Assembly: GCA_001949185.1 (NCBI GenBank) | Contig: BDGG01000002.1 | Coordinates: 7,244,448 to 7,308,447, forward strand | Source: Ramazzottius varieornatus | Taxonomy: Eukaryota; Animalia; Tardigrada | Reading direction: 5' to 3' | Length of the DNA: 64,000 bases | In this document: piece by piece, positions 45,701-63,450 of the stretch | Position numbering within the stretch: position 1 is the stretch's first letter | Layout of the letters: every line of letters begins with the position of its first letter | The notes under the pieces: model-generated | What the model was told of the DNA's origin: nothing | Database searches by the model: none | The model's input: the letters and a program-made list of their open reading frames with translations, nothing else | Program-made: the position numbers and the translations under genes

Positions 45701-48700
45701 ACACTTCGCTCAATAACAGCATGAACCTTTGGCGAGAGGTTGATTACTTTGCAATGCGATAGTACATTATTTTGACTACAATATGGGGAGTCTACAGACA
45801 ATAACTATAAGATCTTCATCTGGCGCACATTTCAATTATTTTTTTATTGGCTGAAAGCACACGCCACTTAATTAGCAGGACGAACTTGTGAGTTTCTTTG
45901 CTGGCCTCCCACAGGGTTCTTAGCTTTATTGGTGCGGAGTTTTCAAGAGCTCGAAATTTCATTTCCGGATGTCTTTCTTATTCAGGTTGGTAGCTGGAAC
46001 ACAGAGGACGGACTGCAACTGCGAGACATTGTCTGGCCAGGAAACAGCCCAGTGCCGCCTCTTGGGAGACCGGAAAAGTACCATTTGAACATTGTCACAT
46101 TGGAGGAAGAACCCTATGTGATCATGAAAAACCCAGGTCAGTCCCATCATTTAGCACCACGGCTCTTTTGTTGCGCGTCTCACCTTCCTTCCCACAGTCA
46201 TCATCAAGGTCAAGCGGGATTGTTACAACTGAAACCGTCTTCTCTCTTTACAGAAGAGCAAAAAGGGGTGTGTGAATCGCGGTCGGCTAAATGTCGGAGA
46301 CGCCCTGCAAACTGGTAAGGAGTGTGATCGAGAGCCTGATCGCTCAGGGCAGGGCGTTGTAGAACTGGTAATGGGCGGAATCTGTTTGCTGAAAATTACA
46401 GGACTAGGACCGATGAGGATATTTGGGAAGAGAGATGCTGTAGTGGACTGTGTATCGACCTACTGCAGAAGCTGGGGTCCGATATGGGTTTCACGTTCGA
46501 CCTCTACCGGGTTGAGGACGGTAAATGGGGCGCGAAGACAGTAAGTGTTGAGAAGCATGAATTTCAAAATCACCATACAGAAGAGAAAAGAAAATTTGAA
46601 CGGCCTTTTAGGAAAATGGATGGAATGGTTTGATCGCCGACTTGGTGACCAAGAAGGCCGATTTGGCTCTCTCCTCCATCAAGATCACCCAAGAACGGCA
46701 GAAGTTTCTCACGTTCTCCATACCGTATTTAGGTAAAACGATACCGTCGACGATAATTCAGACCATGTACTGCGCACCAAGTTGAGCAACCTTTACTTTC
46801 TAGAAACTGGGATCGCAATTGTGGTTGCCAAACGAGAAGGAGTGATTTCACCGACCGCCTTTTTGGGTGCGTATACGGTACTTGAGGGATATGCTCCACG
46901 TGAGGCTAGCTCTAAATCTAAATCAGTTTGTTCCTTTACTTTCAGAGCCCTTCGATTATTTGACATGGATAATTATCGCCGGAGTTTGCATTCAGTGTGT
47001 CAGCGTGTTCATCTTCATTGTACGGTCTAATAAATTTCAAGTTCCAAGATCATATGATCTGTTTGTGTGTACGCGTACTGTACCTTGATATTGTTCGATA
47101 GTTCGAATGGATGAGCCCCGACGGACTTGACATGCAACCAACTCCAGTCAAAGGTACGCTGGAGAGGCAGAAGTTCCCCTCGAAGATTTCTTTGTGCCAC
47201 AGCTTGTAAAATGGTTCTTCCTCATTAGGTGACCACCATTTCAGCCTATTCAGGGTCTACTGGCTGGTGTTTGCCATATTCTTTGGCGCCACCTGTCCGG
47301 TCACACTTCCGAGGTCGCTGACGTCAAAATACCTTACCACTATCTGGGGTAACTGGACTTTCACTGTACTGTAGAAAACGAAGCCTCGATCATTTCTTAT
47401 CGCAAATAAAAAGAGTGAATCGACTACTAGAGGGGACGGACAGAAGACCAAAAAATTGCTGTCTAACTGGCATATTTTTCATACCGACAGCGATATGTTC
47501 GCTGGCCTTCGTTGCTGTATACACCGCGAACCTGGCGACATTCATGATAACGCGGGACGAGGTCTTCGACATCAAAGGCATTGAAGATCGGAGGATCCTA
47601 AATCCTTATTCCAACAGCCCGCCTTTCCGCTACGGAACCATGCCTTTCGGATCGACTTCGGAAACTATCCGGATAGCTTATCCGCAGATTTACAATTATA
47701 TGCAGCAGTTCAATAAGAAAAGTGTGGCCGACGGAATCGAAGCGGTCAAAAGCGGGTACATCACAATTTTCTCTTCTTACGCTGCTTACTTTCCGAAATT
47801 TCAGTGGAGGTTTTATTTTAGCCAGCTCGATGCCTTCCTGTATGATGCCGCCGTACTCGATTACAGAGTCGGGTCAGATCAGGACTGTAAAATTTTGACT
47901 GTGGGTTCCTGGTTCGCCACAACCGGATACGCTGTTGCCTTCCCACAAGGCTCCCATCTTGCTGCCTCCTTTGACGACTTACTGATGTCCTACCAACGCG
48001 ATGGTAACAGGAAGGGATACTGAACGGTGGCTATTAAATTCTCCCGAATTGTTTTCATAAGTGGCGCACGCTGTCTGCCGATAATACTGACGACGTGCGC
48101 CACTTAAAAAAGCGATCTGGATGAGATCTTTTGTCGACTTTCGATATTTGGTCGTATTTACTTTTGTTTGCTAAGTGACATATTCGTGTGTTCGTAGGAT
48201 ATCTAGAGCAGATTCAACAGTTCTGGTTGACCGGTGCTTGTAAGAAGAAAGGGGCGAACCAAGGCAGACAGTCCCACGCCTTGGGCATAAAGAACTTCAT
48301 GTCAGCCTTCATCTTTCTAGGCCTGGGTCTGGCCGTCGGTATCGTCTGTCTCATGGTGGAATGGATATGTTACTACTGTATCCGCTTCGGCCTATTCACC
48401 GGCAAGTCCAAGGTACTCCGCCTGATGAGCGTCAACATCACACGCTACATGGCTATGCGAGCTGCCACCAGAAAGAAGAGAGCCGGCAGTCGTAAGCCTA
48501 TGGACATTGCCACCGTGGCCGAACTGTACCGTAACGCCGAAGAGCTAAAACGCGCGAGAGCCGAAACAGAGTTCTTGCAGAGGAAAAGGCGTCAAATTTT
48601 GAAAATTAACGGTACTGTTGGCGATATAGACTACTCACCATCACCCGACTACGACCAACAGAACAAAAGGTCGTTGAGTGCGGTGCCAGAAGAAGAATAC

Positions 48701-48775
48701 GACCTGTGGAACGGTTGGATGTATGACCAAGCGGAAGTCCCGCTGGAAGTACTAGCTACCGAGACAATCATTTGA
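42713..48775 (+). CDS. Nmdar2: NMDA-type ionotropic glutamate receptor subunit, GluN2/Nmdar2-like (multi-exon)
   Basis: Signal exon at 42713. ATD ([14 protein letters not shown]; [15 protein letters not shown]). S1 ([63 protein letters not shown]). M3 [12 protein letters not shown]2 ([28 protein letters not shown]). FWLTGAC, M4 and a PDZ-type end ETII*. Confidence 0.93.
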
Positions 48776-51426: not shown

Positions 51427-53045
51427 AATGTAGTTCTGATAGCTACACAAACTGATACATGGGTTGTTGTTTCAAAACCAATCAAAGCATGTAGTTACAT
51501 GTTTTGATGGCTACTCAGAACGGTGACTACATCCGCCGCCCATACCCTATAGCTGGAAATGGAAGAACTGTCTAGTGTCTACCTGTGATAAAGCTGTTCA
51601 AGGTCCTGTCCGCATTTTGAGGATCGAAACAGTGATATTGGTTGGTGTAGTTCCTTACATGACAGCTGTACAAACTTGATCGTTAATTCCTTATTCACAA
51701 GTCGAACATACATACACAGTGAGTCTGAGCAGAATTATAACTATAATTACCTGGGGTAGTACGGGTACCGCCCTTGAGCAGGTGGTTTATTGGGAAAGCT
51801 AAAGCTGCATTTCACAGCTTCAAGACGCTACAGGAAATACGGAATCTCACCTCAGGACTTCACCGACGTCAGTTGAAATCAGATGTATACCTCGTAGTTC
51901 TGAATAAAGTCCCTGCAAAATATGGGGGTTATAAAGATAATGCAAATGTTTACCTTCTTGAAGGTTAGCCAAATTTAAGATCTTACTGGAGACCGGTCAT
52001 CGCTTCACCATCGAGGCATTCCACATTCCACTTGCGGTGTGGCTAGAACCAACCCGAAAATTTCCCATAAAGTAGACCACCGGAACCAATGATTGTGAGA
52101 CGGGTAAAGGAAACATAAAATATCTCTATCACAAGCGGCGCACGCTTCCAGCCAACAGTATTGAAATTGTACGCCACTTTTCGACCCCCGAATGAACTCG
52201 TAAATCTACAGTATTTCAGTGAACTCACCAGGTTGGGTCCTCCGTGACGCTGATAAACCTCCACATATGTCTCTCCCTGTCAATATAAATCCATCAATAT
52301 ATCCATGAAATGCAAGTATAAATCAGGCAATAGAACTCTATTTGAGAAGACACTGACCGAGCCATATGGCCAGTAAGATCCATAATACCGGTAGGTTCCA
52401 TCGGACCACAGAAAGGAAGATAACAACTCGAGAACAAATAAACTGTATCTTGCGACCATGATCTTCGCGGTTGCATAAAAGGCAAAAATGTATCAATAGT
52501 ACCCTAACTGTCTGGTAAGCACGCGCGAGAATTTGTAAGTAATCAGAATATACTATGACTGCCCAAAGCGCGATAACTTTGCTCGTCTGGCAATCCAAAC
52601 TCACACAACTAGGCGGCCGACGATCAGGAAGCTGCTCGTCTCAGTGTCAATGTCACTAGCCAGCTAGAAAAACCGGCTAGCTGTTTAAACCCCCCATTCT
52701 TGCAAATCGGACAACCCTCAACTTCTCGCCAAAGTGACGTTTGCCGAGCTTTGAGATTTCACGGTCTTCGGTGGTAGCCTGGAGCGAGATGAGAATATTA
52801 TGTGGTATATCCTAACAGTCTGCCACACGCAGCAACTAAAGAACCTGCTGCTTGTCGCTCGATTCCATCAGTAACCGCAGTAGATCATCATAAGTGTCTC
52901 GCAGAGTTTTACTATTCAAAGAATTAGGCGGAATAATGGAATCTACTTCCGCCTGAGCAAGCACGAAAAGGAGATTACAAAAGGCAAGAATAACATAAGT
53001 TAGCTTTACACGATACATCACCTTCTCGTTGACAAGATAACCCTC

Positions 53046-55822
53046 CTACACGAGCCGTCGATAGGTTCTCTGTGCAGTGACGTTTCCGTATGTGTACGTC
53101 TGAAACAAAGGGAAAATGTTGGTATTTTCCCTGTTCAGCCTTAGCTTTGGAGCCAGTGGTCGCCAGGAAGTGACTTACCGATGTATATCCCTCTTGAGTG
53201 AAGTCTCGTGTGACAGCGAACTCACCCCACGATGGCGTACTCTTGAGTGTGGCCGCCGTGCGTTTCTCCACGAACACTGTGCGCAACTGTGTACGATCAC
53301 CCTCGTACGCCAGGTAAGTATATTCCATCACCCATCTGCCTTTGACTTGTTGCTGATATCGTTCACCGAGGGTGAAAGGAACTTCGTGAAAGGTAGTGTT
53401 AACGTTGGCTGGATAAGAGAACTTTTGGAAATAAGTGCCGTTGTTCTCGTAGTACTCCATGATGGTCTTGGTCAGCAGCTCGGGGAAATCTAACAAAGGA
53501 GAATGCAACAATATTGTAAGGAGATAATTATTAAGCTGGAAAAAAACACAAAAAAGGCCATACATATCCCGAGCGCGAAATTCGAAAAGTCCTTCGAATT
53601 CATGACACTCTCATATTTGCCGTAGATGATCAGGGGAAGCTGTCGCCGGAAGAATCGTTTGGCGGTCATCGGACCCGTTGTGGTCTCTCGCCGGTAACCC
53701 TGCGAAAAAGGTGTTTCGTCCAGTCTCACATAATATATTCAACGGACAAGTACAGTTTTGGTGGGCCCCGTGTGAGGAACTTACCACCATTACGCCTCTT
53801 CCATCAAAGGTGTAGTTTGAGGTGAACGAATTCTCGTTGGCCAGATTCTGGTATTCACCAAACAAGACAGGCTTCTCGCCTCCCTCGTAATAGAAAGATA
53901 TCTGAAAGGAAGACTGCAGATCACAGAGCTTTGCAGATGTGAAATTGCGACCGCCTACCTTGTAAGGTTGTGATGCTATAGTCATTTCAGTTGAGGCGTC
54001 ACCGAAATCGGCAAGCTGGAACGGAACGACCATGGACTCGTCCGATCCGAAGGCGTTCTTCACCTGCAGTTCGTAGCTGCTGTTTTGAGGGTTCTTGCGG
54101 AAAGTTAGAGCGGTAGAAGCGTCCATTTTGACACCGGGTCCGTCTAGGACATGGAGCATACATCTTTTTGGTGGAACTCATTTGGCAAAGAACATCGAAG
54201 CGACAATGAGCTTACGATAGACGGAGTTGAATGCGCCAAAATTTTGGTCTTCCTGCGACGATGCAACGAAGGTCCCGAAAAAATGCAGAGGAAGAGCTCG
54301 ACGATACTTTCGAGTTGCTTCCACACTTCCTATTCGATAAGTCTACAAAAAAAATCCATAAGCTGCAATGCCAGAAGAATGGGCGGAGGTAGTCTTACCG
54401 CGTTTATCCCCTGTCGGTCGATCACAGCAGTCCACAACCATCTGTCTCCAGTTGCAGGGGAAAACTGTCCTCGTACGATGGTGGTGTTGATACTTTCTCC
54501 CTTTTCCACATCGACCACATACTGAAAGGACAAGGGCCATTGTCGTCGGAAAAATGACAAGTGGTTGCGGCGGAAAAATTACCTCCACTTGCTGGCTGTT
54601 AATGGTCCGGCGCTGCACTTCACCAACAATGAAAGGATACTCAATCTGGACAGTCTCGGGATCCAGAAGGTATTTCAAAATGTAATATTTTCCTGACTGG
54701 CCCAGGTACACCTTGTTATTGCCGGAGGAACTTCCGCCTATCGGAGTGACTGCAAATATTTGGATTTTTTTCCAGAAAACTGCACGACAGGGGTAAGAAC
54801 TCGATAATTAAAAACAGTTAACTTACGAAGTTTTAAGCCAATCTGCTTGAAGTTGCTGGACTGCTTGGATTGCTCATTTTCATAGTATCCTAACGCAGTC
54901 TTCGGGATCAGGCGTCTGTAAGATCGGCGAGCCATGATGTTATCCAGCACGTCACTATGCGTATAGGTCTGAAATGAACAGAATGAAGGGTGAACTAACC
55001 GGACAATAATAATGAAATATGCTGTACGTACTACAGTCATTCCGCCTTTTGAGAATACTGCCTCGACCGTAAAGGACATCCACCCATCCCGTTCTGCATA
55101 CCGCGCAAAGATCGTGGCCTTGTTGGGATCGTTCGGCGTAATTTCCAGATAGTAGGTGTACTAAAGAGGAAAAGCCTGGCTCGTTAATTAAGAAAAAAGA
55201 TGGAGTACACGTGTACTGCAAGAACTGAATTTTTCGTGAATGGGAATGCAGTAGTTCATACATCAATGATCTTGTCCTGTGCGTGTAAAGTTCGTAGTTC
55301 GCCGAACCCGAACGGGAAGGTCAAAACAAAGGTGGTGTTTTCAAAGACGAACTGATGGTAGTAAGACCCATTGTTCTTGAAGAAGCGGACGACATTTCTG
55401 TCGGAGAGGCCTGTCGGCAAACCTACAAAACGGCAATCAAAATTTACGAAACTGTAATTGCATTTGCAAAATGGCTTTAACAGCACTCACAAACACAAGA
55501 CTTACGAAGGGCCTTTCCGAACTCTGCAATATTGCCCCGACCACCTGTAAAACCAACCCTCATTTTGCACTCGTGATTACAGTTTCGCACAGTTACATAT
55601 TCAGATGAACAGGAAAAATCTCAGAATACCTGGCAAACTTTCAAAATCCCCCATGATGATGGACGGAATGGTACCCGGTTCCGCCGCGAAAACGGAGGCA
55701 ACTGCAGAGATAGTAAGTTCGATCCATGTATACATTCGACCGCGGTACAATATAGAAAGCGACTTGATCTCACCTACTAGGACGAAGCTTCCGGTCCATA
55801 ATAAGATCTCATGGTACTCCAT
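53046..55822 (-). CDS. Secreted protein of four tandem SAHS/FABP-like (calycin beta-barrel) domains, about 590 aa
   Basis: Phase-consistent splicing gives the signal MEYHEILLWTGSFVLVVASVFA plus 4 repeats. Each starts with P-x-x-x-x-G-x-(F/Y) (PSIIMGDFES, PKTALGYYEN, PLHFFGTFVA, PLIIYGKYES), has a PF-x-x-(G/A)-(E/D) motif, and ends TYTHSD..ARRSYRR, TYRIGSVEATRKYRR, GY..MTAKRFFRR or TYTYGNVTAQRTYRRLV*. These resemble recalled SAHS motifs WMGKWES..NFDAF..ALGLP and TYKVGDVTAKRWYKK. Confidence 0.8.
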
Positions 55823-57414
55823 GGTTTCCTACCTGCTGTCCAGAAGCTGAATCTATGGCTTAAATGCACAAATTTGTAATTCTGAAAGCGGAATCATATA
55901 CACTGTCGTCTGAAATTGAAATTGAGTGCATCTCGTTGGTTTAGCATGGAGTACGAGAGACACTATCGCGTTAGACAACTGATGCCTATCTGGTGGTCAA
56001 AAGTCAAGTGGAGATAGGCAGCTACAGTATAGGGATCCCTTTCACTTGCTGTGACGTGAAACGCTAGATAAGAATACGAATAAAAGGCGAATAGCACTAT
56101 AAAGGACAGAGTGGAAAGTCTCAATATGGCTGCATCTCCGAAGGCTGATGGTCAAACCAGGAAGTCTCCATCTTTGAAGCAGCTGTAGCTAGAAACCTGC
56201 CGGAAAGGGTTGCGGACCGGGTTCCAAGTAAGTTTAATTTAGTTGTTTATGTGGAAAGAATTCTGTGTTTTAAGGTAAATTCGGAACATGTACGAAATTT
56301 GATTACTATACACGCAGGCTCCAAATGCTCCAACTGTTTCTTTGTGTGCGGATGACCGCGCACGACCGTGAGCAACTAAGACTTAAGCATAGAAGGCGCA
56401 GTCCAACGTGTCAGATACGGTCACGCCTTCCGAGTAATTCCTGGCACGCGAATGAGAGGTGTCCTTCTAAAACCTCTCTGGGCTTCACAGCCCGGTACCT
56501 GAAGCAGAAAGCGCTACGGTCCAAACCAAGGATATTGCCGTCCTCCCAGCAACTAAACGTACTTTCCTAACTGGGTCCTCCAAGTCGCCGCACATTCCAA
56601 TCGCTGAGCGTGGCCCTCTCGAGCTGCATCCTGAACTGTTTTCAGAACGTCCCCTTCAAGCCACCAAGCGATTTCCCCAGCCATTGTAGCTGCTATTTTC
56701 CATAAGGCCAAACGTGATCCATCCCATCCAGCCCATAAAAGAAACTTAGATACGATGCTAAGCGAATTTTTCCATCAAACCGGTTTATTCCCAAAGGCGT
56801 ACAACAGGTCAATCTGTGTCACCTCTTGATTTAAAAGTTTTATACCGTTATGTAATGGGTGGAGGGCCGTGGAGCCGGTGGAGGTTGCAAAGTGGTGAAG
56901 GCGTTTGGGTGCTAATCGAATGTGTTCTCCCGTATGAGTTCGAATCTCATCCTTCACGAACGTCGACTCTTTTTTCAAGATTCGACAGAAATAATATTGC
57001 ATTGGGTTTCTAAATTCCAAAAACTGGAAAAGTACCGATATGTAGCAAAAGCAAAACTGCTCACGCTGTTTTGTTCTCTGTTGTCTTTGCTGGGCAAGGG
57101 CAACGGATCGACGAACTGTCCGACGAACATTAGAAATTTTCTCGCTAGAGAATCCCTTCTTCAACGAACCCGATCTTGACCTACTGTAGTCTCTCCGCAA
57201 GCATTATTCGAACTATTTTAGTCGTACCAACACACACCTATCCACAAAATGGTTATTCGAGCTCGATAGAGTGGTTGGACTTTACACACTCACATACGAG
57301 GAAGAATTCAAGAACAGCTTTTCGGATTAAGACAAGCAGAAAATTTCAGTCAGCTGAAATAGAATGAGAGTATTTACAAATTGCAACAGCTACCTTTCAG
57401 GTATCTTCGTCGGG

Positions 57415-60203
57415 TCAGTCGATACGCTTCCTGTTGGGTAGGGCCTTCATCCATGTCTTGCTCAAACCGTGCATGTCGATGAGGATTCCTTTCCGTGCGA
57501 ATTCGTCCAGTCTTTTGGAGTTTTCTTCCAACTGACTCTGAAAAGCGAAAAGTTTGACCAGTCCATCTAATGGTGGGGTGGAAATAACAAAAAAACAATG
57601 GCGGAAGAAGAGAGCGCTTACCTTTGCGGGTGCCTTCAACAGCATTATCTTTTTCGTCTTCGGATCCGTCTTGATGAGGTCCAGTCGGACAAACGTGTCT
57701 TCGATATCTTCCTTCGTCATTCCCAGTTCGCTAATCATGGCGTCCATCAGCTCGCTGAACTGGTTGGTGTTCTCCCATTTCTTCAGCAGGGCTCTCGAAA
57801 CCACGCACTTCCAGTACGACGCGAACGCCAAGAGACCAGGTCGCGACAGAGGGCGCTCTGGTGTACCCGGCTTATGCGTCGTTCTCGCTATGATATAACC
57901 TGCAAAAAAACCCGACCGATACAATGCAAAAATTTTGCGATCGCCAAAGCAGTTTACGCAAAGTGGACGATTTCCATCACAGTACAGCATACAGCAGTCA
58001 TCCAAATCTAACATCACATGGGAGATCGGCCAACACAGCTGAAGAGATCGTTCCTCCAAGTGGCGCACGCTGTCAGTGTTATTGGCTGAAAGCGTGCGCC
58101 ACCTGGAAAGACGGTCTTGTCGATCTAGTTTGCGGAGGTTTCACATAGCTTACTGAGGTCAATTAGGATTTTCCCAAAGCCGCGTTTTTCGAACTGCGGA
58201 AGAACAAGAATACAGGCCAGCGTGTTCTTTTCCAGGTCTTTGTCCTTGGAGAAGTAGCCGACAGGTCGATAAAGACCGTCTTCGCCTCGCTGGGAGAGTA
58301 CATAGTACATCATGTAGATAACGTCGTAGGTGACCGCTTTGGTCGACAGGAAGAAACGGGACAAGATCGACAGGTTCTGGCAGAACTCCTGAAATGGAAA
58401 GAATACAACAAAGTTTATTCTCGTCAAACTTCGGTACAGACTCAACTGCGAGATTCCAACCGCTTCATACCCTGTGGATTTTCCCATCTATTTCGTAGAT
58501 GGCGATGTCGTTCTTGGTGTAGATGTTACTTCCGGGCGGGCAAATCTTTGAGCAGCCAGTAACATGACGGAGGAACTGAGTCTTGTCGTACAACATTTCC
58601 AGACAGACATCGCAGAAGAAGACTTGCTTATGAAGCGGCTCGTCTCGGCCAGTCGCCGACATCTCGCTAGACAAGAAAGCAAACACTGTGTTGATACTCG
58701 GAACACTTTGGTAACACCAATGACAGATTTACTCACTTCACTTCGATTAAGTATTTCCCAATCTGAATCTTCTCTATAAAGCTTTTCTTCCTGTCCGTCG
58801 GATCCAACTGAGACTACAACAAACGAAAAGGTGGGTTAACCTCGCGAAGTTACGAATGTTGCACGTGTCTTTTTTTTCATCATGAACCTACATTCTGAAT
58901 AGCGTTGCTGACTTTCCCCATTTCGAACATCATTTTGGCGAAGACCGAGATGCCTTTTATCTCAGGGGCCACGAAGACGTCAGTCGGCTTTACTGGCTTC
59001 ACGGGTTTGTCCTGGATGTTCATTCGTTCGTCCGCCAGTCCACTTAACATCTCCGCCTACAAATAACGAGGTTTCCAGTAAACAATAGTATCCGAAAGTT
59101 ATCAGCGTGCGTGGCATACTGCTTCTCTCAGCTTCTTCGGGTACGTCTTTCTAGGATTAGTTTCAGCGAGTTTAGCTTGGAGAGCTGTATAGGTTGCAGA
59201 TGTTTCTGCCGATATCCGGTTGTATTTTGGACAGGTATCCAATGAGAAATGTTTCTCACTTCGTCCGTTCAGATGTCCTACACAAATACAGTTCCATAAA
59301 AACGGCCACTCGTTTATCGTTATCGTTCATATAGTATCTGGTTGGTGATGTCCGGAAACAAACTAAGTGAAATCGTTATAGTTACCAGAGCCATCGCAGT
59401 TCGTGGCGGCGCAGCAATGCGGAAAAGGAAGGGTATGCGCGTCTGTGTCTTCGGCAGAAGATGAGTCTCGTTCCGCTTCCAGACTGCGCGAATGGCGTTG
59501 GCGTGGGTTAGGTTTCCGTTTGGGTTTGACAGGGCTCTTGACGAGAAGTTTTTTGTTCTGACCACCGAGAATCTTTGTCCGCCGGAAACCTCGTGTGGTG
59601 TGTTTTGCGTCGATGCAGTCCTTGCACAAAAATGGAGTCTCATCTAAACAAGAGTGGAAAAACTTATCATTCCGCGTTCACTGTATATGCAGTATGCAAT
59701 ATACAGGATAACGATACAGAGTTTAGCGTCTTACCGTCAAGGTTGACATCGAGCAAAGGCGGGTCTAGGCATCGACCATGGCATCCACGATCACACCCAT
59801 CGCAAAACATCATGCCAGTCTACAAATAGTGAGAGGGTGGGTAAAGCAGTACAATATAGTCCGCGGCGGAAGTCAACATACGGCGTCTGCTTTGCGGCAG
59901 ATAAGACATCGGCGACATGACGAGCACTCCCAATTGTAGTTCGTGATCCGGCTACATTTCGGAGGAATTTCTGCACAACTAGAGTGATCTGTAAAATAAG
60001 CATCGCTCTTTCAGATTTGCTGTGGTACTGTGGCAAGACCTGTCGAGATGAATGAGGGATCAGAGCGATTACTCACAGACGTCCGAACAGAAGGTGCATC
60101 GTACCCACGGGGGAAATCCTCCTCGTCGCTTACGCGGTACTTCCGACACGTCAATGTCCTCACCGCACTGTTCACATTGTACAGTTTCGCTGTCCGAATC
60201 CAT
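57415..60203 (-). CDS. MYST-family histone acetyltransferase with a double PHD finger and a CCHHC zinc finger (KAT7/KAT6-like, divergent)
   Basis: PHDs: CEQC..CTFC..WECSSCRRCLIC..MMFCDGCDRGCHGRCLDPPL..FLCKDC. CCHHC: CAATNCDGSGHLNGRSEKHFSLDTCP. MYST: FFCDVCLE..H..C..PPG, YEIDG, FCQNLSILSRFFLSTK, VGYFSKDK, LACILVLPQFEKRGFGKILIDLS, GTPERPLS. Confidence 0.88.
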
Positions 60204-61452: not shown

Positions 61453-63450
61453 AAAGTGGACGGCAAGGGACCAGCGTCGACAGGTCTGAAGGATCCGTTA
61501 CAGTTCCCCTACATCGTCGTCGGTCGATCTGCAGACAGGAGAGAACAGCTAGAGTGCCAGATAGCCTTCTTCAAACGTACTTACAGATATAAGGACTACA
61601 CGGCACATCCGGATAAAGTACACTGCATGTCATGGAACGTGGATGGCTCTTTACTAGTAGGTTTGAAAGCTCGCCTGGATTTCAATTAAGACTTCCCGAT
61701 AGTTCGCTTAACGCTCGATCGTACTTTACTCATACTCATACTTCAAGGCAACGGGATCATACGATAAGAGCGTCATCTTGTTCGCGTACAAGGACGGCAA
61801 GCTATTTCGAGATTATTCCTTAAAGGAACATAACCATAGGTAAGCAGGAGAACATCAGCGAAAGTATCGGTCCATGAATTTTAACCAAATTTTCGTCATA
61901 ATTTTTGTACATAGTATCTTCCATTGCTTTTTTCCTCGTAGTATCGACCAGCTGGCCTGGCATCCCATAAAGCCTGATATCCTCCTCACCTACTCCGCGG
62001 ACAGGGTAGTTCGACTATGGAACGTCAAGCAGCGTAAAGCTCTTCAGTCGTATTCCATCAAGGCTGATGCTCTTTGCGTAGCGTGGGCTCCTGACGGAAA
62101 GACGTTCGCCGTCGGAGACAAAGATGACGTCCTCACGTTTTACGAGGTCGAGAAAGGACAGAAAGTGGATCGACAGTTCGGGTACGAAATCAACGAGTTC
62201 GTGTTCCGCGAAAGCAACGGCAGTATCTACCTGTTCCTGACCACCGGAACCACCGCGGGACATGGCGGCAGGCTGGAGTACTTCGAATACGCCTTTCCCG
62301 AACTGCGCCCAATGTAAGCAACAGGTGGAACATAGCTTTGCTTTTGAGCTGACGTTTGACTATGTGCTGCAGAAACAGCATTCCAGTTTCCGGTGTAACC
62401 AGCACAGTGGCCAAGCTGAATTACACCGGAAGTGCGCTAGCTGTTGGAGGGATGGACGGTAACGTGACACTATGGGACATGAATGGAATGTTTCCCATGC
62501 AAGAAGTCTCTCGGCAGAAGCAAGGCATACGCGGTATATCCTTCAGTCACGATAACCGTTTCATAGCCTGTGTGGCCGAGCATGAAAACTACATCGACGT
62601 AGCGCTGGTCGAGACCGGCGAGAAAGTATGGAGTTTCCAGAACGAAGAGCGTGACGACGAAGAGCATACCTCACTCTGCTGCATCGCCTTCCATCCTACC
62701 CAACTGTACCTCGCTTGTGCTTACGACCACAAGAAAAGCCACAAAGACGGATCGTTCGTGAGACTCTTTGGTGGAACTGGTCCATATGATGACAAGAAGA
62801 AGGATGGAAGAGATTCGCGAGGTCGATCGAGGGAACGAGAGACCAAGGCCGTCAAAAAGCCACTTCCGGTCAAAGTCGAGAAGGATAAAGATGGGAAAGA
62901 TAAAGAGAAAGTAAGATTCGAGTCAAAGTTTTCGTTTCTGAAACCTACGGCAGAGCAGCTAGCGGGACTGGAAGAAAGGAAAGCAGCGAAGGAAGCCAGG
63001 GATGCCAAAGCTGCGCAGATGGCGCAAGCTAGAGCGGCTGCTGCGGCTGCGAGATTACCGGTGAGTTTTTCTGAGCTCGAAAAGGAGGAAGTGGTAAGTT
63101 TTCTTGGTTGCTTGTAGGTGAAAGTGGCAACGAGGCTTGGTGCAGCAGTCACGGCCTCGCCAGTGCGTTCGGGGATCCGGGAGACGGCCAAGCCTCAACT
63201 TCCGGCACAGCCTTCGAGGGATTCGCCGAAGAACTCTCGGCCAGCAAGTCCGCGGAACAAGGACGTAAGTAGCGGAAGAAGAGAAGATGATCCGAAGGAA
63301 GGGTCGTCTAGGAGTTCGTCGACGAATACCAGAAAGCTGGAAGTGGAAGAGAATGACCGGAAGAGGATCCGGTCGAGCGCAAGAGAGGGAGATGGCAAAG
63401 ATTCAAAACAACAACCTGCTGCACCAAGAGGCGATAATCCACGAAGGTAG
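61381..63450 (+). CDS. THOC3: THO complex subunit 3 (Tex1), WD40 protein with a long charged C-terminal extension
   Basis: AHPDKVHCMSWNVDGSLL|ATGSYDKSV, IDQLAWHP..SADRVVRLW, WAPDGKTFAVGDKDDVLTF, YEINE, FLTTG, ISFSHD, YIDVALVETGEKV, IAFHP..LACA, GSFVRLFG. Confidence 0.88.

What the first reader, a model, noticed from the sequence alone, without database searches (positions are those of the whole stretch)
53046..55822. Candidate 'poly-SAHS': one secreted polypeptide of four tandem SAHS/FABP-like barrels
Seen: the ORF track shows only fragments, but joining canonical GT-AG exons in phase gives a 22-aa signal peptide and four divergent repeats of about 140 aa. D1 spans about 55660-54912, D2 runs to 54298, D3 to 53643 and D4 to 53055, with a stop two codons after D4. 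Each repeat has the betaA G-x-(F/Y)-E motif, an N-F/I-x-x-(F/I) helix region, a PF..GE strand and a final TY..A-x-R-x-Y-R-R strand. There are several N-glycosylation sequons (NGS, NTT, NSS, NYT, NGT, NVT). Established: tardigrade secretory-abundant heat-soluble (SAHS) proteins are signal-peptide-bearing FABP-fold proteins linked to desiccation tolerance, and the ones I know are single-domain (about 170 aa). Inference: this is a four-barrel SAHS-related architecture. It may be a multivalent extracellular lipid carrier or membrane protectant, too divergent to have been caught by SAHS searches.
Basis: partly seen in the sequence, partly recalled or inferred. Interest (0 to 1): 0.92.

Follow-up and report, generated by a model that had tools for sequence, protein, structure and literature searches.

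The report
Secreted four-barrel FABP/SAHS-like tardigrade protein
This tardigrade gene really does encode one secreted protein made of four fatty-acid-binding-protein-type barrels in a row, an arrangement I found described nowhere for this fold and hidden so far behind the label "hypothetical protein".

Summary
It matches, piece by piece, the public record "hypothetical protein RvY_05835 [Ramazzottius varieornatus]". In four runs from four studies, one contig of about 2 kb crosses all 13 introns at the predicted borders, so the four repeats sit on one mRNA.

Pfam finds nothing, but the fold is clear:
- D2 and D4 overlay solved FABPs and SAHS1 at Z 15-16.
- The ESM Atlas's own model puts D1, D3 and D4 on FABP clusters (TM 0.80-0.84).
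- The repeats are significantly similar to each other.
- Each repeat keeps the three introns of this genome's own 4-exon FABP gene, at the same places and phases.
- Each repeat ends in the R-x-Y/F fatty-acid clamp.

A 600-aa Hypsibius exemplaris orthologue has the same four repeats in the same order. A distant three-barrel paralogue lies about 19.5 kb away; the scan had noted it separately.

Most likely this is an intact, glycosylated, multivalent extracellular lipid binder. Cleavage into single barrels, or an SAHS-like protectant role, is not excluded. Function is untested. I rate it a new variant of a known kind.

The parts
53046..55822 (-). Whole coding region of RvY_05835: 14 exons, 603 codons + TAG
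   Evidence: Exon arithmetic; identical piecewise to P0007; spliced contigs in 4 runs
55774..55822 (-). Exon 1: ATG and first part of the signal peptide; ends in phase 1
55630..55701 (-). Exon 2: rest of the signal peptide (predicted cut after residue 22, VFA|AEP, near 55685/55684) and strand A of D1
55506..55544 (-). Exon 3: helix region of D1. The intron before it is an extra one, found only in D1
55262..55422 (-). Exon 4: D1 counterpart of FABP exon 2 (enters in phase 1, ends in phase 0)
55032..55160 (-). Exon 5: D1 counterpart of FABP exon 3 (phase 0 to 0)
54827..54968 (-). Exon 6: last strand of D1 (R-S-Y-R-R) and, with no break, strand A and helix of D2. The D1/D2 junction lies inside this exon
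54583..54749 (-). Exon 7: D2 counterpart of FABP exon 2
54399..54521 (-). Exon 8: D2 counterpart of FABP exon 3
54216..54342 (-). Exon 9: last strand of D2 (R-K-Y-R-R) plus the start of D3
53959..54143 (-). Exon 10: D3 counterpart of FABP exon 2
53785..53901 (-). Exon 11: D3 counterpart of FABP exon 3
53564..53699 (-). Exon 12: last strand of D3 (R-F-F-R-R) plus the start of D4
53179..53489 (-). Exon 13: D4 counterparts of FABP exons 2 and 3 fused (middle intron lost); holds the Arg aligned with FABP Arg106
53046..53099 (-). Exon 14: last strand of D4 (R-T-Y-R-R), two more residues, then TAG
54912..55684 (-). Barrel D1, residues 23-169 (introns included in the span)
   Evidence: ESM Atlas model: residues 29-170 against an arthropod FABP cluster, TM 0.80
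54298..54911 (-). Barrel D2, residues 170-309
   Evidence: AF2 + VIA: Z 15-15.7 against FABPs. Orthologue D2: Z 16.1 against SAHS1
53643..54297 (-). Barrel D3, residues 310-456
   Evidence: ESM Atlas model: residues 312-456 against a mollusc FABP cluster, TM 0.78/0.84
53055..53642 (-). Barrel D4, residues 457-601
   Evidence: VIA: Z 15.0, rmsd 1.9 A, 22% identity against SAHS1 5xn9_B. ESM: TM 0.81

Best explanation
RvY_05835 encodes one secreted, N-glycosylated protein of about 66 kDa (581 mature residues, no cysteine). It consists of four FABP-fold beta-barrels joined by linkers of about three residues (x-[L/I]-P).

It arose by repeated duplication and fusion of a canonical 4-exon FABP-type gene unit. 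Each repeat keeps that unit's three introns, and each domain junction lies inside an exon.

Every barrel keeps the Arg-x-Tyr/Phe pair of the last strand. In FABPs and in SAHS1 (site LBS1) this pair clamps a fatty-acid carboxylate. D4 also keeps the Arg that aligns with FABP Arg106.

I therefore infer that the intact chain binds several fatty-acid-like amphiphiles at once and acts in the extracellular fluid as a multivalent lipid carrier or buffer.

Shown: gene structure, single transcript, fold, repeat homology, orthologue and paralogue. Inferred: secretion, glycosylation, ligand class, and that the chain stays uncut.
For: - Gene and transcript.
- Fold: Foldseek gave 286 hits at E <= 1e-3, nearly all intracellular lipid-binding proteins plus SAHS1. 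VIA gave Z 15-16 for D2 and D4 against whole FABP and SAHS chains. The Atlas's own model (pTM 0.73) matches FABP clusters for D1, D3 and D4.
- Sequence: a two-orthologue profile ranks SAHS1 (E 0.033) and a mite FABP (E 0.41) first among 177,635 PDB sequences, aligned in the matching barrel positions.
- Ligand residues: Arg106, Arg126 and Tyr128 of FABP 8wkh align with R, R and Y of D4. PMC5916119 and PMC11127935 state that SAHS1 Arg161/Tyr163 correspond to the FABP carboxylate-binding pair.
- Repeat homology: D1-D4 2.6e-14, D1-D2 7e-7, D2-D4 2e-5, D1-D3 1e-3 to 1e-7.
- Introns sit in the same alignment columns in all repeats, at the same places and phases (1-0-0) as this genome's own FABP gene on contig C7.
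- Each repeat is 40-60% identical to its Hypsibius counterpart but only 16-29% identical to the other repeats. So the order D1-D4 is old and each barrel is constrained separately.
- Evidence that the chain stays intact: the dibasic pair after Tyr also ends the single-domain FABP of this genome (R-T-Y-K-K-I-stop), SAHS1 (R-W-Y-K-K) and D4 itself two residues before the stop. The linkers are about 3 residues with a conserved Pro. Junction windows are 64-82% identical against 49% overall.
Against: - No ligand-binding, secretion or protein-size data exist for this protein. No paper or searched supplement mentions either locus tag.
- My own AF2 models are weak (mean pLDDT 55 and 50, from two-row alignments).
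- Only D4 keeps the third Arg of the FABP triad, and Tyr is Phe in Rv D3 and He D2.
- PMC11127935 argues that SAHS cavities may not bind one particular ligand.
- R-R followed by x-[L/I]-P at all three internal junctions, and K-R or R-R at both junctions of the paralogue, would also suit a dibasic processing site.
- The signal peptide is judged by eye. Its n-region is acidic.
Confidence: 0.6

Rival explanations
1. Polyprotein precursor: the chain is cut after each R-x-Y/F-R-R by a dibasic-specific convertase in the secretory pathway. This would release four different single-barrel, SAHS-like proteins from one mRNA, in the manner of nematode polyprotein allergens.
For: R-R sits at all three internal junctions in both species and is followed by x-[L/I]-P. 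The three-barrel paralogue has K-R and R-R at its two internal junctions but T-R at its C-terminal strand. The junctions are among the best-conserved parts. Scan note s1-813126 raised the same idea.
Against: The dibasic pair is an ancestral feature of the fold's last strand. It also ends this genome's single-domain FABP, SAHS1 and D4 itself, where nothing lies downstream. P4 is not basic (S, K, F, T), so the classical furin R-x-K/R-R motif is absent. The site is part of strand J, only about 3 residues from the next barrel's strand A, so access would be poor. The Atlas pTM of 0.73 for the whole chain hints at a defined arrangement of the domains (a lead only).
Confidence: 0.2
2. SAHS-type desiccation protectant: the barrels need no specific ligand. 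The protein would act like SAHS1/4/6, stabilising membranes during drying, with four linked barrels adding avidity or bridging.
For: SAHS1 is the top solved structure for Rv D4 (rmsd 1.9 A, 22% identity) and for He D2 (Z 16.1), and the top PDB sequence hit. Like SAHS, the protein has a signal-peptide-like start and conserved sequons. SAHS proteins protect liposomes and bacteria on drying (PMC11127935).
Against: SAHS1 leads the FABPs by only about 1 Z unit, which the tool counts as tied. There is no BLAST- or Pfam-level link to SAHS. It is absent from the 13 SAHS loci counted by BLASTP (PMC5531438). I have no data on abundance, heat solubility or induction on drying. The locus tags are absent from the supplements I could search.
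Confidence: 0.15
3. Annotation or assembly artefact: the repeats are really separate neighbouring single-barrel genes, or the joined frame is a chance reading.
For: None beyond the fragmentary look of the raw ORF track.
Against: The three domain junctions lie inside single exons with no stop. One contig per run spans all 13 joints in 4 studies, with no other joints reported. A 600-aa orthologue in another genus is collinear over 99% of its length.
Confidence: 0.01

Closest known systems
Tardigrade SAHS proteins (RvSAHS1, PDB 5xn9/5xna; RvSAHS4, 5z4g)
   Same: A secretory-type N-terminus, the FABP-like barrel, N-glycosylation sequons, and the Arg-x-Tyr pair of LBS1 followed by a dibasic pair. 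SAHS1 is the best solved match for two of the barrels and the best PDB sequence hit. Same organisms.
   Different: Four barrels in one chain instead of one. Similarity cannot be detected by BLAST or phmmer. Not among the SAHS loci counted by BLASTP (PMC5531438). Heat solubility, abundance and a role in drying are unknown.
Cytosolic FABPs / intracellular lipid-binding proteins (Pfam PF00061, PF14651), including this genome's own FABP gene on contig C7 (L017)
   Same: The same fold (Z about 15, roughly 129 of 133 residues). The same three intron places and phases. The same G-x-Y...S-K-D-F start and R-x-Y-basic-basic end.
   Different: Secreted rather than cytosolic. Four domains. No Pfam match at any threshold tried. 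Only D4 keeps the Arg106 counterpart.
Secreted nematode FABPs (As-p18, C. elegans LBP-1 to LBP-3)
   Same: FABP barrels exported through a signal peptide into extracellular fluid (PMC6646235). LBP-3 and LBP-8 structures appear among the VIA matches.
   Different: They have a single domain. No specific sequence relationship was shown.
Nematode polyprotein allergens (ABA-1 type)
   Same: A tandem array of small lipid-binding units made as one secreted precursor, with basic residues at the unit borders (PMC3079579).
   Different: Their fold is helical, not an FABP barrel. Their units are known to be cleaved, whereas cleavage here is only a possibility. No homology.
Insect polycalins (multi-lipocalin-domain midgut proteins).
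   Same: Many calycin-type barrels strung together in one extracellular polypeptide.
   Different: Their barrels are 8-stranded lipocalins, not 10-stranded FABP barrels. Different animals and an independent origin.

Membership tests
FABP / intracellular lipid-binding protein superfamily | Ten-stranded antiparallel barrel with a helical lid between strands A and B | tested here: met
   Predicted models only. D2 and D4 score Z 15-16 over whole FABP chains. D1, D3 and D4 score TM 0.80-0.84 against FABP clusters with the Atlas model. DSSP shows strand, helix, then about 9 strands per repeat.
FABP / intracellular lipid-binding protein superfamily | Match to the family profiles (Pfam PF00061 / PF14651) | tested here: not met
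   No such hit for the exons, P0003 or P0007 even at E <= 10. A PDB profile search gives only E 0.03-0.4.
FABP / intracellular lipid-binding protein superfamily | Gene unit of four exons with three introns at conserved places (phases 1, 0, 0) | tested here: met
   Compared with this genome's own FABP gene. Intron 1 follows the first helix in phase 1. Intron 3 lies exactly 10 codons before the Arg of R-x-Y in D2 and D4. D4 lost intron 2 and D1 gained one.
FABP / intracellular lipid-binding protein superfamily | Carboxylate-binding Arg...Arg-x-Tyr | tested here: met
   Arg-x-Tyr/Phe is present in 8 of 8 barrels across the two species (6 Tyr, 2 Phe). The third Arg is present only in D4, shifted by two residues in Hypsibius. 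Actual binding was not tested.
FABP / intracellular lipid-binding protein superfamily | Small, single-domain cytosolic protein | tested here: not met
   603 aa, four domains, and a hydrophobic cleavable-looking N-terminus.
SAHS (secretory abundant heat-soluble) family | Signal peptide / secretion | tested here: inconclusive
   The N-terminal hydrophobic core is the only window above the hydropathy threshold, and seven sequons are conserved. No predictor or experiment was available.
SAHS (secretory abundant heat-soluble) family | Sequence membership of the SAHS clade (BLASTP-level similarity to SAHS1-13) | tested here: not met
   phmmer of P0007 does not list SAHS1 or SAHS4 at E <= 10. P0003 gives E 1.2 and the profile gives E 0.033. 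No tree could be built because no SAHS sequences were held by reference.
SAHS (secretory abundant heat-soluble) family | Single barrel of about 170 aa | tested here: not met
   Four barrels in one chain on one mRNA.
SAHS (secretory abundant heat-soluble) family | Abundant and heat-soluble; protects on drying | not testable with these tools
   Contig depth cannot rank expression. No proteomic mention was found.
Cleaved lipid-binding polyprotein (nematode polyprotein allergen type) | Post-translational cleavage at basic sites between units | not testable with these tools
   Dibasic pairs are present at the junctions, but also at the ends of single-domain FABP and SAHS1.
Cleaved lipid-binding polyprotein (nematode polyprotein allergen type) | Helix-rich unit fold | tested here: not met
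   The units are beta-barrels.

The most novel reading that the evidence does not exclude
RvY_05835/BV898_01505 and the neighbouring three-barrel gene would form an unrecognised, tardigrade-restricted family of secreted multi-barrel FABP-fold proteins. Rigidly linked barrels, each specialised, would carry or bridge lipids outside cells and contribute to membrane protection in anhydrobiosis. That would make them a further class of tardigrade protectant beside CAHS, SAHS and MAHS.
Probability: 0.15. Interest if true: 0.8.

Novelty: new variant of a known kind. Interest (0 to 1): 0.62.

Why it matters
FABP-fold proteins are textbook single-domain lipid chaperones, and tardigrade SAHS proteins are their secreted, single-barrel offshoot linked to desiccation tolerance. 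Here four such barrels, each diverged yet each conserved between two tardigrade families, are expressed as one secreted chain.

- It shows the fold can be built into a multivalent extracellular protein.
- It gives a clean, intron-marked example of domain multiplication from a 4-exon gene unit.
- It adds candidates that BLAST-based SAHS censuses miss.
- It is directly testable by protein size, lipid stoichiometry, drying assays and knock-down in tractable tardigrades.

It does not yet bear on anhydrobiosis, because no expression or functional data link it to drying.

Tried and rejected
**Searches that gave nothing**
- Pfam on ten exons, on P0003 and on P0007: no FABP or lipocalin hit.
- PDB phmmer with the D4 exon: nothing.
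- A multi-species D4 profile built from database fragments (A2): nothing, probably spoilt by intron read-through in those fragments.
- Word-indexed protein search with the D4 exon: one fragment only.
- Locus tags in papers and in three papers' supplements: none. Only BV898_01512, a different gene, is in the glycoproteome.
- Literature searches for multi-domain FABPs: nothing relevant.

**Searches that gave little**
- Whole-library HMMER with the D4 exon: five hits, all close relatives. These were the Hypsibius orthologue and unnamed ENA fragments.
- Own-genome searches: the D4 exon finds only itself. The two-orthologue profile finds only its own exons plus one weak hit in the neighbour. PF00061 finds two weak exon hits.
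- The domain profile does not hit the 'five-exon secreted FABP-fold gene' region of scan note s1-795213 (L019).

**Not possible or left out**
The Hypsibius locus, its introns and its synteny could therefore not be examined.
- Exons were searched one by one by reference. The full-length work used the public proteins P0007 and P0003 by id. The neighbour gene was scored exon by exon only.

**Readings rejected**
- Separate genes or a chance frame.
- Classical furin sites: P4 is not basic.
Full report
**What is in the sequence.**
On the minus strand, an ATG at 55822 opens a gene of 14 exons. Every one of the 13 introns starts GT and ends AG, usually after a pyrimidine-rich tract. The exon lengths sum to 1812 nt, which is 603 codons plus a TAG at 53048-53046.

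The three domain junctions lie inside exons 6, 9 and 12. There the last strand of one repeat runs straight into the first strand of the next, with no stop and no intron between them.

**Which gene it is.**
The genome has 55.8 Mb in 200 contigs, and the window is C2:7244448-7308447. A word-indexed search with the full-length relative returned two proteins:
- P0007, 'hypothetical protein RvY_05835 [Ramazzottius varieornatus]', 603 aa, on a contig of 9,028,361 bases. This is the length of the window's own contig.
- P0003, 'hypothetical protein BV898_01505 [Hypsibius exemplaris]', 600 aa, 48% identical over 99% of its length.

The 14 exon translations, taken one at a time, lie end to end in P0007. 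The only gaps are single residues at the split codons, and the last piece ends at residue 603. So the public annotation equals the model.

Exons were searched singly by reference. Everything done on the full length used P0007 and P0003 by id.

**One transcript.**
Eighteen runs from five studies hold about 52% of the sampled words of 53000-55900, which is the share expected for spliced RNA. I laid four runs from four different studies on the stretch. Each gave one contig of 1977-2106 nt that skips all 13 introns. The ends of the skipped parts read CT..AC on the plus strand, which is GT..AG on the gene strand, exactly at the model's borders. No other joints were reported.

The runs are only guessed to be RNA, but contigs that lack every intron can only come from spliced RNA. 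The four repeats are therefore on one mRNA. Contigs cannot give expression levels.

**The repeats are related to each other.**
I cut the two database proteins at the R-x-[Y/F]-R-R ends. This gives four domains of 140-147 aa in each species. The blastp E-values between repeats, against a database of only these 8 domains, are:

| Pair | E-value |
|---|---|
| D1-D4 | 2.6e-14 |
| D1-D2 | 7e-7 |
| D2-D4 | 2e-5 |
| D1-D3 | 1e-3 (1e-7 in Hypsibius) |

Each repeat is 40-60% identical to its counterpart in the other genus but only 16-29% identical to the other repeats. The four-barrel order is therefore older than the Ramazzottius/Hypsibius split, and each barrel is kept for itself.

**The fold.**
Sequence libraries fail. 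Pfam gives nothing for the exons or for either full protein. Against PDB sequences:
- P0003 alone reaches only E = 1.2, but its single hit is SAHS1.
- P0007 alone gives a mite FABP, 8wkh (E 0.19), and a chance-level tRNA synthetase (E 0.82).
- A profile of the two orthologues ranks SAHS1 first (E 0.033) and that FABP second (E 0.41) of 177,635 sequences. Both align in the matching parts of the barrel.

Structure prediction is decisive:
- My AF2 model of P0007 is weak (mean pLDDT 55, two-row alignment). Even so, Foldseek returns 286 hits at E <= 1e-3, almost all CRABP, FABP, myelin P2 and SAHS1.
- VIA-align places D2 (169-310) on whole FABPs at Z 15-15.7 (rmsd 2.7-2.9 A, about 129 of 133 residues).
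- VIA-align places D4 (459-602) on SAHS1 5xn9_B at Z 15.0, rmsd 1.9 A, 125 of 137 residues, 22% identity.
- An independent model of the Hypsibius protein has SAHS1 as the top match for its D2 (Z 16.1, 132 of 137 residues). SAHS4 scores Z 14.8 and the FABPs about 15.
- The ESM Atlas holds its own model of this exact protein (pTM 0.73, pLDDT 0.73). That model matches FABP clusters for D1 (29-170, TM 0.80), D4 (456-603, TM 0.81) and D3 (312-456, TM 0.78 by query and 0.84 by target).

All four repeats thus have a structural match to the FABP fold, from two different predictors.

**Gene structure as independent evidence.**
In the alignment of the eight domains, the introns of the four repeats fall in the same columns:
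- a phase-1 intron just after the first helix;
- a phase-0 intron in the middle;
- a phase-0 intron before the last strand.

D4 has lost the middle intron and D1 has one extra.

Rather than trust my memory of FABP genes, I read this genome's own canonical FABP gene on contig C7 (L017).
- It has four exons.
- Exon 1 is 73 nt. It ends one base into the next codon, right after G-T-Y...S-K-D-F-D-K-Y-M-E-A-I.
- Exon 2 ends in phase 0, and exon 3 runs from phase 0 to phase 0.
- The last exon begins exactly 10 codons before the Arg of R-T-Y-K-K-I-stop.

D4 reads G-K-Y...S-K-D-F-S-N-F-A-L-G-I and then has a phase-1 intron. The last-strand exons of D2 and D4 also begin exactly 10 codons before the Arg of R-x-Y. 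The repeats are therefore copies of a 4-exon FABP-type unit. Because the junctions lie inside exons, I infer that a last exon first fused to a following first exon, and that later copies arose by unequal exchange within the phase-0 introns.

**Ligand residues and the junction motif.**
HMMER aligns Arg106, Arg126 and Tyr128 of FABP 8wkh with R, R and Y of D4. It also aligns the R-W-Y-K-K of SAHS1 with the R-x-Y-R-R of D4.

PMC5916119 and PMC11127935 state that SAHS1 Arg161 and Tyr163 superimpose on the FABP pair that holds the fatty-acid carboxylate. All eight barrels keep Arg-x-Tyr, with Phe in two of them. Only D4 keeps the third Arg, and in Hypsibius it sits two residues earlier on the strand.

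Scan note s1-813126 read the R-R at each junction as a convertase site. Several observations argue against this:
- The same dibasic pair ends the single-domain FABP of this genome and SAHS1.
- It also ends D4 itself, two residues before the stop.
- P4 is not basic.
- Only about three residues (x-[L/I]-P) separate the pair from the next barrel's first strand.

One observation argues for it. The three-barrel paralogue has K-R and R-R at its internal junctions but T-R at its C-terminal strand. I keep cleavage as a live rival at about 0.2.

**Other properties.**
- The mature chain has 581 residues, 66.3 kDa, pI 8.8 (6.7 in Hypsibius) and no cysteine.
- The N-terminus is the only strongly hydrophobic segment.
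- There are nine N-x-S/T sequons, seven of them conserved in position in Hypsibius. This fits passage through the secretory pathway.
- The junction windows are 64-82% identical against 49% overall.
- The best-conserved stretch of all is a run of 23 identical residues (34-56) in the strand A and lid region of D1. I cannot explain it.

**Relatives.**
A scan of 1.84 billion representative proteins with the D4 exon gave only five hits. They were the Hypsibius orthologue and unnamed ENA fragments at 43-91% identity. The family looks narrow.

Within the genome, the domain profile finds one paralogue, the gene of scan note s1-814006 at C2:7319789-7321915, about 19.5 kb away.
- I modelled it as 10 GT-AG exons and 446 codons. 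It has a signal-peptide-like start, three repeats and the same junction pattern.
- Its separate exons score E 1e-7, 8e-5 and 3e-4 against 3,298 background pieces, in the correct profile positions.

The window's other genes give no functional context. By eye, an ionotropic glutamate receptor lies upstream, and a MYST-type acetyltransferase and a WD-repeat gene lie downstream.

**What it most likely does.**
- Shown: one mRNA, four FABP-fold barrels, an old and conserved domain order, and conserved carboxylate-clamp residues.
- Inferred: the protein is secreted and glycosylated, stays in one piece, and binds several fatty-acid-like amphiphiles, serving as a multivalent extracellular lipid carrier or buffer (confidence about 0.6).
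- Rivals: a convertase-processed polyprotein (0.2), a ligand-independent SAHS-like membrane protectant (0.15), and an artefact (0.01, refuted here).

These readings are not fully exclusive.

**Comparison with what is known.**
It works like, and descends from, the FABP superfamily. Its nearest solved structures are the tardigrade SAHS proteins, but their lead over the FABPs is only about one Z unit.

It fails the sequence-profile test for FABP and the BLAST-level test for SAHS, and it is not single-domain. I therefore do not file it as an SAHS member. It is a secreted multi-barrel variant of the FABP/SAHS kind.

I found no paper that describes a multi-barrel FABP-fold protein or that mentions either locus tag. 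The library does not hold most subscription-journal papers, so this is absence in what I could search.

**Verdict.**
This is a new variant of a known kind, of moderate to high interest (0.62). The function remains to be tested.

Noticed in passing
L003:1342-3468 (minus strand) = G000:C2:7319789-7321915, about 19.5 kb beyond this gene: A three-barrel paralogue: 10 GT-AG exons, 446 codons, a signal-peptide-like start, internal junctions F-R-Y-Y-K-R|I-L-P and R-F-Y-R-R|M-L-P, and a C-terminal strand R-N-Y-T-R. Its exons hit the four-barrel domain profile at E 1e-7 to 3e-4. No transcript check was possible.
   Followed up: partly
window 55631-55663, 55506-55544 and 55415-55422 (residues 34-56 of P0007; strand A and lid of D1): A run of 23 residues is identical between Ramazzottius and Hypsibius, although the proteins are 49% identical overall. 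It carries a G-G-R-G insertion and an extra intron that the other repeats lack. It may be a portal or partner-binding site. Unexplained.
   Followed up: no
L017:1371-2630 (+) = G000:C7, about 1850692-1851951: This genome's canonical cytosolic FABP gene: 4 exons, intron phases 1-0-0, a 73-nt first coding exon, ending R-T-Y-K-K-I-stop. I used it as the control for intron positions.
   Followed up: yes
Proteins P0004 and P0006 (both on an ENA contig of 31,394 bases); P0001, P0005, P0008; P0002: Unnamed ENA fragments carry D4-like exons at 43-91% identity, apparently from at least three other tardigrade sources. Several read through into introns, which is what bacterial-style gene calling on animal DNA would give.
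   Followed up: partly
window 45929-48775 (+), 57415-58487 (-), 61874-63117 (+): By eye, the flanking ORFs look like an ionotropic glutamate receptor, a MYST-type histone acetyltransferase and a WD-repeat protein. There is no lipid-related gene cluster around the four-barrel gene. Not verified with family searches.
   Followed up: no
H. exemplaris BV898_01512, seven locus tags from the orthologue BV898_01505: PMC12167791 lists it as an N-glycoprotein carrying fucosylated antennae, and its glycopeptides are in that paper's supplement. Whether it is the Hypsibius counterpart of the three-barrel neighbour could not be checked.
   Followed up: no
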